Shown: positions 47,722-63,335, counted from the stretch's first letter. The stretch is 64,000 bases of DNA from Lytechinus pictus (GCF_037042905.1 NC_087246.1:13392001-13456000); one strand, 5' to 3'. Notes: generated from the letters alone by a model not told the origin. Numbers and translations: made by a program.

Positions 47722-48890
47722 ATGACTTCTCTGACTTCAAAGTACTTACAGGTATGTACATATTGATATTAATGGTCGTTTCTCTATAATAACAAATGTT
47801 ACTTCTTCCTTTTGGTTTTTCAAATTGGCTCAACTACACTGTAAAAATGATTGGGTAAAATTTTAAACAGCACTAGGGTAATTATGTGTCCAACCAATTT
47901 GGGTCAGTATTTTACACAAGGCGGGAAGCATATATATTGTCCAGTAAGGTTAATAAATAAGCAGCAATTACTTTAGAATGGGCAAAATTTTCATCCCACT
48001 GGATGAATAAAAATGCCCAAAAGAAATTCCCAATGTTGGTTGGACACATAAATACCCTTATGGATCATTTTTACCCAATATTTTTAGAGTGTAAAGAAAC
48101 TGTACAATTGAATATAGATATTAAAGCGCAGTGTGTTTGAAAGAGATTATATTTGATACTGATTCATGGCCTGTAGTCGTATGCATATTTTGGTTTCATT
48201 AAACTAATTGTGACTTCTTTTTCTATTTCTTTCATTTGTCAGCTTCCAGATGCTAACTCGTGTGATATTGGCAAACCAAGTCCACTTGCCATGTTAGCTG
48301 CAACCTGTCGAAAGATCGGCACATCACCAGGCGTGTCTTCTCGTCGAGTGCCGAGGATACCTTCACCACAACCCCAGCTCACTCCGTTGTCGACGACCTC
48401 GCCTGTTTCTACATCATCATCCTGTTCGTACCTTCCACCTACTCCACCACCGTCACCACACATGACATCGTCATATCCAGCGTTGTCGGTATCACCTGAG
48501 CCTACCGAGTTGTCAGCTCTCCGATCAGTTAGCCCGATCATCCCTGGTCATCAGCCATGCTACTATCCTCTTTATCAACCTGTTATGCGGTACTCTCCTT
48601 ACTCTACTACACCTCTATCAAGACCAAGAGTACAACCATCATCCATGAGCTACCATCTAGCTACCACTCCATACTCATCGTGTACTCCTGTGGTTGTACC
48701 AGTACCAACATTCAACCACACGCTTCATTCATCATCGTCACCACCCATGTTCGGGGTCTACCCTCATCATGACCAACCCATCCATGCTACGACGTCGTCA
48801 ATGAAGGTCCGCCCTACGAGGAATCAAAGATCACGCCGAGTGGTAATCAAGGATGAGGAAGAGGAGATCATCGATGTCGTATCGCTCTGA
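47722..48890 (+). CDS. Zinc-finger-less Sp5-derived Sp-box protein, copy 1 (exons 47722-47751 and 48243-48890; 225 aa)
   Basis: MTSLTSKYLQ|gtatgt...tgtcag|LPDANSCDIGKPSPLAMLAATCRKIG...RRVVIKDEEEEIIDVVSL*. Sp box present, no C2H2 fingers. Confidence 0.85.
47837..48091. mobile_element. CACT-terminus MITE (CMC/EnSpm-like) in the intron of copy 1
   Basis: ta|cactgtaaaaa...tttttagagtg|ta. The empty site (caacTAaatgaaac) is visible in the introns of copies 2 and 3. Confidence 0.85.
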
Positions 48891-49356
48891 AGAATATAGA
48901 CTTTGTTTTGATATGGTATACGTAAATAATATATTTGAGATTTGAAGTCGCTTGTAGCGACCTCATGTCTTTAGTTGTGAAATAAATCTATTCGAAAATG
49001 CATATCTTGTCTTAAAAGGTCTTTAACTTTGGCGTCAAGCTATTTAGCAGGGGCATATACTGGAACTTGACTTCGAAAGAGTTAAGATGGGTTGCATTTG
49101 CTTGTATGTGCGAAGTTGATGGAGTAAAATAGTGCAAGGAGGTGGAGGAGGAGGAGGGAGAGGGAAAGCAATCGAGGGCAAGTGTGTGTGTATGTGAGGG
49201 AGGGCCAATCGAGGGACAGAGTGCGTAAAGTTGAGAATTAAATGGGTGATGGTTCACTTCAAACAGTGATACCGACTTCAGACAGACAAATGTTGTATCA
49301 TCAGAAATAGGCCGTAATGTGTTAACTTTGATCGATCCTGGGTCGGTTTAGTTATT

Positions 49357-49389
<33 letters not shown>

Positions 49390-49862
49390 GGGCAGTGCAG
49401 AAGGGGATGAGAAGAAGAAGACGAAACGCTAATAAATATTTACAGGCGTGAAATAAGTTTAAGTGATATATATTTGAACAAAATCCTTCAAATAAATATA
49501 ATAATGCGAGTCACTTATTCCAGTGTTTAGAGTTCAGATACATGTAGAACACGATTTTTCGTTTTATATTATCATTTAATTTATTGTTAAAATAGCAGGA
49601 ACATTATTTTCTTTCATTCAGGGTTAACTTTTGCGTCGCTCTTTTTTTTTTCCTTTCCAATCATTTGCATCTCTTTCCCCCTTCCTTTACTTCCCCCTTG
49701 ATATTTTCCTTCTCTTTTTCTCTATTTCCACTCCCTTTCTTTCCCCTCTCCCTTTACACTATCTTTTTTTTTTTTGGGGGGGGGGGGGCGAGGCCCCTTC
49801 AGCCCCTAAAGGTCCCCACCTGAATTAAATCATAACAATACCAATATTTCAATAAAAATACA

Positions 49863-50043
49863 CACTCTAAAAATCGAAGAGATACGAGGAGCTAATTTAG
49901 CTCTTAAAGAGCGTGTATAGTGACTGCACTTCGGAGTGCTGATTTTTCTCGTTCAAATTTGAACTAGACAAATCAGCACTCCGAAGTGCAGTCACTATAC
50001 ACGCTCTTTAATAGCTAAATCAGCTCTTCATTTTTTTAGAGTG
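49863..50043. mobile_element. Near-perfect 180-bp palindromic MITE (CACTC termini)
   Basis: aaagagcgtgtatagtgactgcacttcggagtgctgattt pairs exactly with aaatcagcactccgaagtgcagtcactatacacgctcttt. Confidence 0.8.
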
Positions 50044-60122: not shown

Positions 60123-60367
60123 GATTGGTGAACTCGTCGAAGGAAATGCTGTGATTGGTCGGCGGTGTGGTGCATAAGAATGTGTAGAGTTGTGATAGCT
60201 AATTGGTTGAAACGTCAGTCGGTATCTGGTCAGTGAGGTGGTCATTGAGGCGTGTGCTAGCGCGTGATTGGTGAACTCGTCGTAGGAAATGCTGTGATTG
60301 GTCAAAGGTATGGTGCATACAAACGCATAGTAAAGCAAAGACATAAATAGCGGGAAATTCATAGTGG

Positions 60368-61022
60368 ATGGTTATCATTTTTGCCCTGAGCTACAGACTG
60401 AGATCACATCAACTTCGTTACTTCGATACTAGTAATTCATCTTCATCATGGCTTCATTCAACCTCCAAAGCAGAAGAAGCAGTCGCAGCAGCACCATTAG
60501 CAGTAGCTAAGGAGAGAGTGCCTGAGCAGAGAAAGATCACGATACCTCCCCCTTCTGGATTCGAAGCATTGATGGTAAGTGTCACTGATTATTATTTTTT
60601 ATAGATTTTTTTAACGTTTCTATGTTTAAAATACAAGAGAAAAGTATTTAATCTGTATGCTTAATCGAAGTTTATATATTGTTACTGTCTTTTTTATTAG
60701 GCATCTGACGGTAGCAAAGGCGGAAATTGGTTCACGGTGCGGGAAGAGGCGGGTTGCCATTTTAGCCAGGAGTTCGATTCTTACGAATTTGAGGAAGGGT
60801 CAAAACCTTTCCACTTGGGGGGGAAGACGTTTTGCGGTGGTGAAGAAATTTAGGAGTGTCCCCTACATTAATATTAGGGAATATTATAAATTAAAAGGAA
60901 CAAGGAGAATGCTTCCCGGGCAGAAGGGCATCAATTTGACCGCGGAAAATTGGTGGCATTTGGTGCAGGCCAAATTTGACATTAGTAAATCTGTCCGGGA
61001 ATTGAGCAATGTAAAAAAATAA
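60368..61022 (+). pseudogene. Spliced PC4/Sub1-domain gene (leader exon ending 60574; exon 60701-61022) with one extra G in the G7 run at 60817-60823
   Basis: ...SGFEALM|gtaag...tattag|ASDGSKGG...PFHLGG / RRFAVVKKFRSVPYINIREYYKLKGTRRMLPGQKGINLTAENWWHL. Start uncertain (60368 or 60448). The frameshift could be an assembly error. Confidence 0.75.
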
Positions 61023-61282
61023 GATTGCACTAATATCCTAGCTTACTTTGGTTCTTATAATGTATAATGTATTTTTTCAGTAAATTTTGTTTTAAAACAT
61101 TAGTTTAAAAAAGAAGAAAAAATTGATAAACAACAACAACAACAAAAACCCAAAATGAAGTGTTCTAAAAATGAAAATACAAATTTATATAAAAAAATAA
61201 TGATTAAAAGAAATTAAAAAAAAAACTCCTGACTGACTGGAACCCATTTCCTCTTTTCCGTATCCAGAACGTGGTCAACAAG

Positions 61283-62132
61283 ATGGAGGAGGAACTGAAT
61301 GGTGCAGCCTTTCTCTCAAGAACGGTAGAACCAGCCCCTACATCGCCAAAAACACCCGAACTGTTCATCCTAAATGATGATGACGATGCGTCACCCCCAC
61401 CAGCCCCTGTGGTAGCTGGCCGCCACCGTCTTCAAAGGCAACATGCTGTCATGGTCCATGCTACACCATGTGGGAGACCAGTCATGCCAGTGGTAACTGA
61501 AGAGCCAAGGATAGGAGCCGCATCGAGGCAACCACCACCACCATCCCCTGAAATAGTCGTCATTTCGGATGACGAAAATGGTGACGTAGACGAAACCATC
61601 AACAATCTTTTTCCGACAATACGCCGAAGATTAGACTACGAAATGGAGGAGGATGAAGAGGGCAAGGAAGAGGAGGAGGAGAAAGAGGTTGATGATGACT
61701 CGGGGATGGAAGAGGGGGAGATAGTTGAACCGGAGGACTCAGACATGACAGATGTCGCGGAGAATATTCCGGTAAGAATGAACGTACCCTCTGGCCCTCT
61801 TATAATGGCAATAAACTCGTTGACAAATAAAGTAAACTAAGTTGTCTACGAGAACTGTATATGGTGTATTAATGAATGTGGTGGGCAGCGAGACCACCCT
61901 GAATGTTTATGGTTATCAAGAAACGAAAAGATTGATAAATATTTTGAAGCAGCGTTAGCCAGGTTAGATTTTAAAGATTTTTTTCAACCAATTTGATAAC
62001 GTATACAATGTAAAATGCATGTTTGAAGAAGATCAAGATATGTGTGTCGAAGAAGCGTCAAGCTTCTATCATTTTGACCTTCGAAAAAACGATATAAAAT
62101 CCCATTTAAAGGCAAAACTGAAAGAAATGTAA
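61283..62132 (+). pseudogene. Acidic protein with C-terminal CxxC...QxxHxxC motif (stop at 61838-61840 and a later frameshift)
   Basis: The frame continues past the TAA as VVYENCIWCINECGGQRDHPECLWLSRNEKIDKYFEAALARLDFKDFF, aligning with CEGCQNDCLAQKYHYECLWLD... at 39.5 kb. Confidence 0.65.
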
Positions 62133-63335
62133 TGGTCCAGAGAACTTAATGTGAATTCTACAAAATTTGATTTTTTTACTTGTCTCTCCCCCTCCCCTTG
62201 GATATTGTGATGCTTATTTAACTAATTTTTGGTTCAAAACCAAAAGAGCCATCTTGAAATATTACTTTGATTTTTCTGATGTTTAACTTTATTGAACAAC
62301 CTGTAAAGACATTTATTTGTTAGAATGATTTTGTTGTTGTTGATTTTCTGATGTTTAACTGATATTGAATAACCTGTAAAGACATTTATTTGTTAGAATG
62401 ATTTTGTTAGTATGCAACTGCCAAAAAGACAAATATCAATTTTGAATCTAAAACCAAAAGAGCTATCTTGATATATTACTTTGATTTTCTGATGTTTAAC
62501 TTTATGAATAACCTGTTAAAAATGTTTTCCAGTCAGTTAGGATTGGTTTATTTTTCAACCTATCCTTTGTTAGTATACAACTGGTAAAAGATGATAATCA
62601 ATTCTTTGTACTTTAAACAGAATTTCATTTATGTTTTCTTAATTTCGTTTGTATATGCACATATTTGGTTATTTTCCTTTGTTAATATTTTGTTTTAAAC
62701 GCTGATTTCTTCCTTGCATTATCAGTAAATTTATTCGAGACAAAACATTTAATTAAGTATGAAATAATCTTTTCTTTGCAAAATTATTTAAAGTTTGTAT
62801 AAAAAAAAGGGGGAAAAAGAAAATCAGGCCGAATTTAATAAGTTGTTATATCATGTTTAATCAGAATAACGTTGATCTTAAAACACTGAAGAAGAAAACA
62901 GGGTATGTTTTTTGTTGTTGTTTAAAATGTTTTGATCATTTTTTTATGTTTATCAGTGTACATTTCATTTTGAGAATTTGGTTAATACATAACCTCTATC
63001 AAGACCAAGAGCACCACAATCATCCATGAGCCACCATCTAGCTACCACTCCATACTCATCGTGTACTCCTGTGGTTGTACCAGTACCAACATTCAACCAC
63101 GCGCTTCATTCATCATCGTCACCACCCATGTTCGGGGTCTACCCTCATCATGATCAACCCATCCATGTTACGATGTCGTCAATGAAGGTCCGTTCTACAA
63201 GGAATCGACGATCACGCCGAGTGGTAATCAAGGATGAGGAAGAGGAGATCATCGACGTCGTATCGCTCTGAAGAATATGGACTTTGTTTTGATGTGGTAC
63301 ACTTGGATAATGTATTTGAGATTTGAAGTCATATA

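What the first reader, a model, noticed from the sequence alone, without database searches (positions are those of the whole stretch)
47722..63271. Tandem family of zinc-finger-less Sp5-derived 'Sp-box-only' proteins
Seen: three co-oriented two-exon genes (ATGs at 47722, 52814 and 59217) encoding MxxLTSKYLQ|LPxAxSCDIGKPSPLAMLAATCRKIG, a Pro/Ser/Thr/Tyr-rich low-complexity middle and a stop after 225 aa, with no buttonhead box or C2H2 finger. Known: vertebrate SP5 has a very short first exon ending ...FLQ, a phase-0 intron and then ...DLGKHSPLALLAATCSRIG, and canonical Sp factors end in a Btd box plus three zinc fingers. Inference: an Sp5 paralog lost its DNA-binding half, kept the Sp box (which lies in an N-terminal repression region) and was amplified in tandem. 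It could act as a dominant-negative or cofactor-bridging modulator in Wnt/Sp5 patterning. I know of no described family with this architecture.
Basis: partly seen in the sequence, partly recalled or inferred. Interest (0 to 1): 0.92.

Follow-up and report, generated by a model that had tools for sequence, protein, structure and literature searches.

The report
Tandem zinc-finger-less Sp5 paralogue genes
A sea-urchin chromosome carries a row of expressed two-exon genes that are copies of the Wnt-pathway transcription factor Sp5 with the DNA-binding middle removed but both protein ends kept. I found no paper describing this family, which occurs across echinoids and probably competes with Sp5 for its partners.

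Summary
The window is Lytechinus pictus chromosome DNA. Copies 1 and 2 are intact two-exon genes of 225 codons. RNA contigs and stranded RNA-seq reads confirm both predicted GT..AG junctions, and coverage ends about 100 nt after the stop. Copy 3 is broken: 3.43 kb of foreign DNA replaces 270 bp of exon 2. The array continues beyond the window, giving 5 intact copies and 1 broken copy in about 37 kb.

The Sp5 origin is well supported. The proteins are colinear with echinoderm Sp5: a first exon ending ..[YF]LQ, a phase-0 intron exactly 12 residues before the Sp box, an identical Sp box, LPPTPP, FGxYPHH, a degenerate basic remnant of RRCRRCR, and the acidic C-terminal tail. Only the Btd box and the three fingers are missing. 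So the proteins are not "Sp-box-only".

A family profile matches Sp5 best, Sp1-4 by the Sp box only, and Sp6-9 and NET not at all. Members were found only in echinoids. There is an older single-copy ~280-aa form and multi-copy ~225-aa arrays that group by species.

The protein is predicted to be disordered. The proposed mechanism, a nuclear decoy for Sp5 partners, is inferred, not shown. I found no paper on the family; RefSeq names it automatically. Earlier scan notes cover this same window only.

The parts
47628..47751 (+). Copy 1, exon 1. The 5' UTR reaches at least 47628; CDS is 47722-47751 (MTSLTSKYLQ).
   Evidence: The RNA contig in X1 spans 47628-47748 joined to 48240-48300 with 0 mismatches. 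Sequence.
47752..48242 (+). Copy 1 intron (491 nt, GT..AG, phase 0). It is enlarged by a high-copy repeat at about 47808-48151; other copies have 187-217 nt.
   Evidence: Joint 'skips 491, GT..AG'. Contig depth of about 290-940, on both strands, is seen only at 47700-48100. Comparison with copy 2. Intron lengths.
48243..48890 (+). Copy 1, exon 2 CDS (215 codons plus TGA).
- Sp box: 48279-48320
- LPPTPPPSP: 48432-48458
- FGVYPHHD: 48750-48773
- Basic KVRPTRNQRSRR: 48804-48839
- Tail EEEEIIDVVSL: 48855-48887
- AATAAA: 48981
   Evidence: RNA depth 11-30 on this exon, falling to under 0.5 after 48900.
52814..52843 (+). Copy 2, exon 1 CDS (MASLTSKYLQ).
   Evidence: RNA depth rises from about 52700.
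53061..53708 (+). Copy 2, exon 2 CDS (215 codons plus stop). The intron is 52844-53060 (217 nt). AATAAA at 53800.
   Evidence: Joint 52843|53061 in 17 stranded reads with 13 starts in X20 and 1 read in X21..
59217..59560 (+). Copy 3, the 5' part of a broken gene: exon 1 at 59217-59246, intron, and the first 97 nt of exon 2 (59464-59560). The frame stops at a TAG just inside the insert, after 42 codons.
   Evidence: RNA reads with loose ends that match the insert sequence.
59561..62990 (.). 3430 bp of foreign DNA replacing 270 bp of copy 3 exon 2. It carries a PC4-like ORF (60657-61022) and an acidic ORF (61271-61840).
   Evidence: blastn of copy 2 against copy 3. Pfam PC4 match, E 5.5e-13.
62991..63271 (+). 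Copy 3, the 3' remnant of exon 2: the last ~92 codons with the IIDVVSL tail and the stop.

Best explanation
SHOWN. These are complete, transcribed, spliced genes of an echinoid family derived from the Sp5 gene. An in-frame internal deletion in the large second exon removed the Btd box and the three C2H2 fingers.

Kept features:
- the short first exon ending ..[YF]LQ and its phase-0 intron
- the Sp box
- the LPPTPP block (here TPPPSP instead of TPPAE)
- FGxYPHH
- a cysteine-less basic remnant (RNRRSRR) of RRCRRCR
- the acidic C-terminal tail (E-I-I-D-V-V-S-L against E-I-V-D-V-T-S in urchin Sp5)

The product is predicted to be disordered, with one short helix in the Sp box.

INFERRED. The protein enters the nucleus through the basic patch. 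It cannot bind GC boxes, and it presents the same short linear motifs as Sp5. It therefore competes stoichiometrically with Sp5, and through the Sp box perhaps with other Sp factors, for the partners of those motifs. Candidate partners:
- a still unknown Sp-box partner
- a proline-directed-kinase/FBW7-type degron reader at TPPxS
- a reader of the acidic hydrophobic D-V tail, either the WBM cleft of WDR5 or SUMO

This would tune Wnt/Sp5 output. A need for high dose fits the multi-copy arrays seen in every echinoid sampled.
For: Gene reality
- Both junctions, plus-strand transcription and a 3' end near the AATAAA.
- All 5 intact copies have exactly 225 codons; pairwise dN/dS is 0.21-0.87.
- RefSeq models in four species end at the same stop.

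Sp5 origin
- Colinear blocks.
- Identical intron phase and position: own Sp5 exon 1 is ..PTRFLQ|GT and exon 2 starts 12 residues before SPLA.
- HMM scores favour Sp5.
- The profile search finds only family members and starfish Sp5.

Conservation
- The 25 invariant columns across Lytechinus, Strongylocentrotus, Diadema and an unidentified ENA-sourced group fall in the Sp box, TPP block, SPY, GxYxxH and tail.

No DNA-binding domain
-.

Disorder
- Mean pLDDT 53.6; the only helix is residues 14-21.

The tail motif is an old Sp5 feature
- 18 of 60 non-vertebrate-type Sp5 tails carry acidic-acidic-[VIL]-D-V, against 0.9 expected from shuffled tails; 0 of 25 vertebrate-type tails do.
- The WBM core is described as 'AAXDV', with RBBP5 ..EDEEVDVTSVD and MYC SEEEIDVVSV (PMC10583817; PMC5852437).

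Context
- An engineered Sp5 without its DNA-binding domain loses repression of Wnt3 (PMC6338789).
- Sp5 patterns the urchin anterior-posterior axis (PMC10765061).
Against: - No interaction, localisation or phenotype has been tested.
- The stage and tissue of the RNA runs are unknown.
- The function of the Sp box is itself unknown (PMC5168829).
- The tail is E-I-I-D-V, not the strict acidic-acidic-X-D-V of the WBM core, so WDR5 binding is uncertain. The same letters also fit a SUMO-interaction motif.
- TP..S patterns are common in Pro/Ser/Thr-rich proteins.
- The Sp5 'PWWS' block is not kept, so only part of the Sp5 interaction surface is present.
- dN/dS between some paralogues is near 0.9, so not every copy may be under strong constraint.
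Confidence: 0.5

Rival explanations
1. Positive adaptor rather than decoy. The finger-less protein is brought to chromatin by other factors, for example through whatever binds the Sp box. It uses its tail to bring WDR5-containing (or SUMO-dependent) complexes, acting as a co-regulator in its own right.
For: The tail is the most invariant block after the Sp box. It resembles the RBBP5 and MYC WBM peptides. MYC uses that motif for chromatin recruitment.
Against: There is no evidence of any chromatin tether. The strict AAXDV core is not met. No partner was tested.
Confidence: 0.2
2. Turnover decoy. The Sp box has been proposed to act in degradation, and TPPxS is a phosphodegron-like block. By keeping both, the proteins act as competitive substrates that protect Sp5 (or other Sp factors) from proteolysis, raising rather than lowering Sp5 activity.
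For: The Sp box has been linked to proteasome-dependent cleavage, as a hypothesis (PMC5168829). The conserved block L-P-P-T-P-P-P-S-P fits the FBW7 degron pattern, and Sp5 itself has T-P-P-A-E. The pattern is from my own knowledge of ELM classes. High gene dose suits a competitive substrate.
Against: There is no evidence that Sp5 is an FBW7 or GSK3 substrate. The composition is rich in P/S/T.
Confidence: 0.15
3. Functionless relics. The copies are decaying duplicates of Sp5 that happen to be transcribed.
For: One copy is broken yet still transcribed. Some pairwise dN/dS values are near 0.9.
Against: - The same architecture and the same invariant motifs are kept in Diadema, Strongylocentrotus, Lytechinus and another group, in two subfamilies that split before these lineages did.
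- All five intact copies keep 225 codons without an indel.
- Most dN/dS values are 0.2-0.5.
Confidence: 0.05
4. Not Sp5-derived. The Sp box comes from a NET (Noc/Elbow/ZNF503) gene or another Sp class, or the exons belong to a longer gene with downstream finger exons.
For: NET proteins also carry an Sp motif, and the genome has one such gene (L018).
Against: - The family HMM gives no match to the genome's own NET or Sp6-9, and matches Sp1-4 at the Sp box only.
- The intron offset before the Sp box is 12 residues in the family and in Sp5, against 5 (NET), 4 (Sp1-4) and about 7 (Sp6-9).
- There is no finger or Btd coding potential in 94 kb.
- No joints leave exon 2, and a poly(A) signal follows each stop.
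Confidence: 0.03

Closest known systems
Sp5 (Sp/KLF family, Sp5-9 class), especially echinoderm Sp5
   Same: - Short first exon ending ..[FY]LQ.
- Phase-0 intron 12 residues before the Sp box.
- Sp box identical to urchin Sp5 (SPLAMLAATCRKIG).
- LPPTPP block, FGxYPHH, and a basic stretch before the Btd position.
- Acidic C-terminal hydrophobic D-V-[TV]-S tail.
   Different: - No CxCPxC Btd box, no C2H2 fingers and no PWWS block.
- About 225-280 aa instead of about 410.
- TPPPSP instead of TPPAE.
- Multi-copy tandem arrays, unlinked to Sp5: C2 and C3 against C1.
NET family (Noc/Elbow/Tlp-1, Nlz, ZNF503/703)
   Same: Carries an Sp motif near the N-terminus and acts without classical triple-finger DNA binding (own knowledge).
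   Different: NET proteins have a Btd box and one atypical C2H2 finger. Their Sp motif reads ..LLAQTC.. and their intron offset differs. The family profile does not match the genome's NET gene.
DNA-binding-domain-less paralogues or isoforms of transcription factors that act by titration (Id/Emc HLH proteins, LMO, plant microProteins such as LITTLE ZIPPER)
   Same: Derived from, or related to, a transcription factor. Lacks the DNA-binding part and keeps the interaction parts. Dose-dependent logic.
   Different: Here the kept parts are short linear motifs in a disordered chain, not a folded dimerisation domain. No binding partner or interference has been shown.
WDR5-binding motif (WBM) of RBBP5, KANSL2 and MYC box IIIb
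   Same: An acidic run followed by [IVL]-D-V-[VT]-S. The family tail is E-E-E-I-I-D-V-V-S-L, MYC is S-E-E-E-I-D-V-V-S-V, and RBBP5 is E-D-E-E-V-D-V-T-S-V.
   Different: One extra hydrophobic residue replaces the second acidic position of the 'AAXDV' core. The motif sits at the extreme C-terminus. Binding is untested, and the letters equally fit a SUMO-interaction motif.

Membership tests
Sp transcription factors (Sp5) | Three C-terminal C2H2 zinc fingers (KLF-type DNA-binding domain) | tested here: not met
   No Pfam zf-C2H2 match in the family proteins, while own-species Sp5 has three. No finger pattern in six frames of 94 kb.
Sp transcription factors (Sp5) | Buttonhead box CxCPxC just before the fingers | tested here: not met
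   Absent. Only a cysteine-less basic remnant, R-N-R-R-S-R-R, aligns with R-R-C-R-R-C-R.
Sp transcription factors (Sp5) | N-terminal Sp box S/T-P-L-x-phi-L-x-x-x-C-x-R/K-phi | tested here: met
   SPLAMLAATCRKIG, identical to urchin Sp5. Motif definition from PMC4558859.
Sp transcription factors (Sp5) | Homology to Sp5 outside the Sp box (descent from Sp5 rather than another class) | tested here: met
   Colinear blocks and the shared intron. HMM 36-53 bits to echinoderm Sp5, against 26 bits to Sp1-4 and none to Sp6-9 or NET. Starfish Sp5 at E 1.5e-8 in a database-wide profile search.
NET (Noc/Elbow/ZNF503) | Sp motif plus Btd box plus a single C2H2 finger | tested here: not met
   Only the Sp motif is present. 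The family profile does not match own NET gene L018.
DBD-less titrating paralogue (Id / LMO / microProtein kind) | Derived from a transcription factor and lacking its DNA-binding domain | tested here: met
DBD-less titrating paralogue (Id / LMO / microProtein kind) | Binds the parent factor or its partners and interferes with its activity | not testable with these tools
   Only conservation of the shared motifs is shown. There is no interaction or phenotype data.
WDR5-binding motif (WBM) | Core acidic-acidic-[VIL]-D-V | tested here: inconclusive
   The family has E-I-I-D-V and urchin Sp5 has E-I-V-D-V, so the second position is hydrophobic. Many protostome Sp5 tails meet the strict core. Core definition from PMC10583817.
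WDR5-binding motif (WBM) | Binding to the WBM cleft of WDR5 | not testable with these tools
   No WDR5 sequence could be obtained under the tools' rules, so no complex job was sent.

The most novel reading that the evidence does not exclude
The finger-less Sp5 paralogues form an echinoid-specific regulatory layer of the Wnt/Sp5 axis-patterning circuit. The conserved C-terminal acidic hydrophobic D-V tail, shared with invertebrate Sp5 and lost in vertebrates, is a true WDR5 (WBM-site) or SUMO docking motif. On this reading, ancestral Sp5 worked through that partner, and the arrays evolved to titrate it at high dose.
Probability: 0.2. Interest if true: 0.8.

Novelty: new variant of a known kind. 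Interest (0 to 1): 0.62.

Why it matters
Sp5 is a conserved Wnt target. It patterns the primary axis in Hydra, sea urchins and vertebrates (PMC6338789, PMC10765061). Surveys of Sp genes count three in S. purpuratus (PMC3087555), apparently because they score the zinc-finger domain, so this family was not counted.

A conserved, expressed, multi-copy set of natural Sp5-minus-DNA-binding proteins is a ready-made experiment. It marks which short motifs of Sp5 matter apart from DNA binding: the Sp box, whose function is still unknown, the TPP block and the tail. It may also be a missing modulator in the well-studied urchin Wnt network.

There is a practical point too. RefSeq gives both a 412-aa finger-bearing protein and a 283-aa finger-less protein of S. 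purpuratus the name 'transcription factor Sp5', which can mislead expression and orthology analyses.

Tried and rejected
- Pfam scans of the family proteins gave nothing beyond one sub-threshold chance hit.
- An exhaustive single-sequence HMMER search found only four cluster representatives, the named ones from echinoids (pending; result).
- PDB sequence searches with the Sp5 and family tails found nothing, as expected for short motifs.
- My first regular expression missed Sp5 exon 1, and P0024's N-terminus was not found literally.
- The S. purpuratus C-type member P0023 has no separate orthologue in this genome at this sensitivity.
- The unidentified ENA-sourced members could not be assigned to a species, because no DNA was served.
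- Literature searches by topic, LOC numbers and XP accessions found no paper on the family.
- No complex-prediction job was sent.
- The automatic names (extensin, FLO11-like, RPB1-like, mucin-like) are rejected as composition artefacts of a Pro/Ser/Thr-rich chain.
- Splicing of copy 3 around its insert was considered. There is no GT/AG at the break points, and three reads run through into the insert. Copy 3 itself was outside the stretch laid.

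
Full report
**What is in the sequence.** The window is G000:C2:13392001-13456000.

At 47722, 52814 and 59217 there are 10-codon first exons (M..LTSKYLQ) followed by GT. Second exons start at 48243, 53061 and 59464. Copies 1 and 2 encode 225 residues and stop at 48890 and 53708.

Copy 3 is broken. Its exon 2 matches copy 2 only to 59560. 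Then 3430 bp of unrelated DNA (59561-62990) replaces 270 bp, and homology resumes at 62991-63271. The insert carries a PC4-like ORF and an acidic ORF. The copy 3 frame stops after 42 codons.

The array runs on beyond the window. Further intact 225-codon copies start at window-equivalent positions 65560, 78785 and 83350. That makes five intact genes and one broken gene, all on the plus strand, in about 37 kb. The repeat unit includes roughly 750 bp upstream and several kb downstream of the coding part.

**Are they real genes?** Yes.
- A contig from an RNA-type run joins 47628-47748 to 48240-48300 without a mismatch. This is the predicted 47751|48243 junction with a 3-nt ambiguity.
- Seventeen stranded RNA-seq reads with 13 different starts show 52843|53061.
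- Both introns are GT..AG, and first mates lie on the minus strand, as expected for plus-strand RNA.
- Depth on exon 2 is 11-30 with about 6% of the run read, and falls below 0.5 after 48900. No other joint leaves the exons.
- Each stop is followed by AATAAA 85-95 nt later.
- No C2H2 finger or true Btd box is encoded in any frame of the 94 kb examined.
- Three reads that begin in exon 2 continue into the first letters of the copy 3 insert, so the broken copy is still transcribed.
- Copy 1's longer intron (491 nt against 187-217 nt) is due to a high-copy repeat at about 47808-48151.

**Selection.** The five intact copies have no indel. Pairwise dS is 0.04-0.14 and dN/dS is 0.21-0.87, mostly 0.2-0.5.

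**Relatives.** Sequence searches found members only in sea urchins: L. pictus, L. variegatus, S. purpuratus, Diadema setosum and an unidentified group of ENA-sourced contigs. RefSeq's automatic names range from 'transcription factor Sp5-like' to 'extensin', 'FLO11-like' and 'RPB1-like'.

A profile search added a second subfamily of about 276-284 residues. It is single-copy in L. pictus, on another chromosome (L017, C3:8.307 Mb). Its own two-exon structure begins MLNTGSSKYLQ|GT and ends ..EEIIDVVSV. The only other significant hits of the profile were starfish Sp5 proteins.

A maximum-likelihood tree separates the long single-copy form from the short multi-copy form before the Diadema/camarodont split. 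Within the short form, copies group by species or genus. This means either repeated local amplification or concerted evolution.

**Origin from Sp5.** A degenerate Sp-box pattern finds eleven sites in the genome, against none for the reversed control:
- six in the array
- the long paralogue
- Sp6-9 (C1:9.37 Mb)
- Sp5 (C1:36.44 Mb)
- Sp1-4 (C1:36.65 Mb)
- a NET-type gene (C18)

In Sp5 and in the family, exon 2 begins exactly 12 residues before S-P-L-A, in phase 0. The offsets are about 7, 4 and 5 residues in Sp6-9, Sp1-4 and NET. Sp5 exon 1 in this genome reads ..PTRFLQ|GT. Diadema Sp5 has ..SKFLQ and starfish Sp5 has ..SQFLQ followed by LPDKCSSDFNKPSPLA.., which is very close to the family's SKYLQ|LPDASSCDIGKPSPLA.

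The alignment is colinear:

| Block | Family | Sp5 |
|---|---|---|
| Sp box | SPLAMLAATCRKIG | identical (urchin) |
| TPP block | Y-L-P-P-T-P-P-P-S-P | Y-E-L-P-P-T-P-P-A-E |
| YPHH block | F-G-V-Y-P-H-H-D | F-G-I-Y-P-H-H-L |
| Basic stretch | S-S-M-K-V-R..R-N-R-R-S-R-R | S-I-T-K-L-A-A-R-R-C-R-R-C-R |
| Btd box and three fingers | single gap | present |
| Tail | E-E-E-I-I-D-V-V-S-L | S-E-D-E-I-V-D-V-T-S-E |

A family HMM scores 36-53 bits on echinoderm Sp5, 26 bits on Sp1-4 (Sp box only), and nothing on Sp6-9 or NET. Because Sp5's second exon encodes everything from the Sp box to the C-terminus, the loss must have been an in-frame internal deletion, not exon loss.

The YPHH block is shared with echinoid Sp5 but not starfish Sp5. 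The N-terminus looks more like starfish Sp5 than present urchin Sp5 does. Both fit a duplication in the echinoid stem, followed by divergence of the canonical gene's N-terminus. This dating is inference.

**What the protein looks like.** AlphaFold2 with the family alignment gives mean pLDDT 53.6 and pTM 0.14. The single helix is at exon-2 residues 14-21, inside the Sp box. So this is a disordered chain carrying short conserved motifs. The 25 invariant columns across all members lie in the Sp box, the TPP block, an S-P-Y block, G-x-Y-x-x-H and the tail.

**The tail.** Echinoderm Sp5 tails all end in acidic residues followed by two hydrophobic residues and D-V-[TVM]-[SN]. Many protostome Sp5 tails carry E-D-I-D-V or E-D-V-D-V. 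Among Sp5-type proteins retrieved here, 18 of 60 non-vertebrate-type tails contain acidic-acidic-[VIL]-D-V, against 0.9 expected from shuffled tails. None of 25 vertebrate-type tails do.

That core is how the WDR5-binding motif of RBBP5, KANSL2 and MYC is described ('AAXDV'; RBBP5 AAEDEEVDVTSVD, MYC SEEEIDVVSV; PMC10583817; PMC5852437; PMC10279693). The family tail has a hydrophobic residue at the second 'acidic' position, so it is near the motif but not strictly within it. By my own knowledge it also fits a SUMO-interaction motif: a hydrophobic core flanked by acidic residues and a serine.

An earlier AI note on this window (s1-317524) proposed the WDR5/SIM and TPPxSP readings. I checked only the published motif definitions and the sequence patterns, not binding.

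**How it most likely works.**
- Shown: a transcribed, conserved, finger-less Sp5 derivative that keeps Sp5's conserved non-DNA-binding motifs.
- Known: engineered Sp5 without its DNA-binding domain no longer represses the Wnt3 promoter (PMC6338789). Sp5 is a Wnt-driven regulator of urchin axis patterning (PMC10765061). The Sp box has no established function, and a role in degradation has been suggested (PMC5168829).
- Inferred: the proteins are nuclear through the basic patch, and they titrate the partners of these motifs away from Sp5. Gene amplification supplies the dose.
- Rivals: a positive adaptor that brings WDR5 or SUMO-dependent complexes, or a competitive substrate that protects Sp5 from turnover.
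- Tested and disfavoured: a functionless relic, or a NET or other-Sp origin.

**Novelty.** I found no paper on the family by topic, LOC number or accession. The urchin Wnt/Sp5 paper does not mention paralogues. The Sp-family survey counts three Sp genes in S. purpuratus. A genome-wide motif survey only notes that the Sp box occurs in 'a small set of genes' outside the Sp family.

The kind is known: a transcription factor paralogue without a DNA-binding domain. The new elements are this instance, its short-motif-only make-up and its tandem amplification. I rate it a new variant of a known kind, of solid interest to developmental and evolutionary biologists but without functional evidence yet.

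Noticed in passing
window 59561-62990: The DNA that broke copy 3 carries a PC4 (p15 coactivator)-like ORF at 60657-61022 (Pfam E 5.5e-13). It also carries an acidic ORF at 61271-61840 with SIM-like stretches (..ELFILNDDDD.., ..EIVVISDDE..), and internal 131-bp and 70-bp direct repeats. It has no other copy in the 94 kb examined.
   Followed up: partly
window 47808-48151: A high-copy repeat is inserted in the intron of copy 1. RNA-contig depth reaches about 290-940 on both strands, and many loose ends lie at 47892 and 48091.
   Followed up: partly
window 14964-15995 (-): Large open exon encoding a zinc carboxypeptidase domain (Peptidase_M14, E 1.5e-66) with an N-terminal signal-like segment.
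   Followed up: partly
window 36384-37431 (-) and 39361-40654 (-): A retroelement-like fragment with a chromodomain at the end of an integrase-like ORF (Pfam Chromo, E 1.8e-6). Next to it are two nearly identical tandem ORFs (MEVQEEGEIPPS.. / MEEQEEGEIPPS..) with no Pfam match.
   Followed up: partly
L009, L010, L008, L018 (G000 C1:36.44 Mb, C1:36.65 Mb, C1:9.37 Mb, C18:4.19 Mb): The canonical Sp genes of this genome. Sp5 and Sp1-4 lie 213 kb apart on C1, Sp6-9 is 27 Mb away on the same contig, and one NET-type gene is on C18. The finger-less genes are unlinked to all of them.
   Followed up: yes
Sp5 proteins P0024-P0143: Invertebrate Sp5 proteins commonly end in an acidic tail with E/D-E/D-[VIL]-D-V: 18 of 60, against 0.9 expected from shuffled tails. 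Vertebrate Sp5 and Saccoglossus lack it. I found no mention of this tail motif in the Sp-family papers read.
   Followed up: partly
P0179 and P0190 (S. purpuratus XP_799924.2 and XP_789110.2): RefSeq gives the same name, 'transcription factor Sp5', to the finger-less 283-aa long-form paralogue and to the true 412-aa Sp5. This is a likely source of confusion in orthology and expression tables.
   Followed up: yes
L031 / G000 C1:36435296-36435327: Sp5 exon 1 in this assembly reads ..PTRFLQ, whereas the older RefSeq protein P0024 reads ..PTRLLQ. This is an allelic or version difference at the conserved FLQ position.
   Followed up: no
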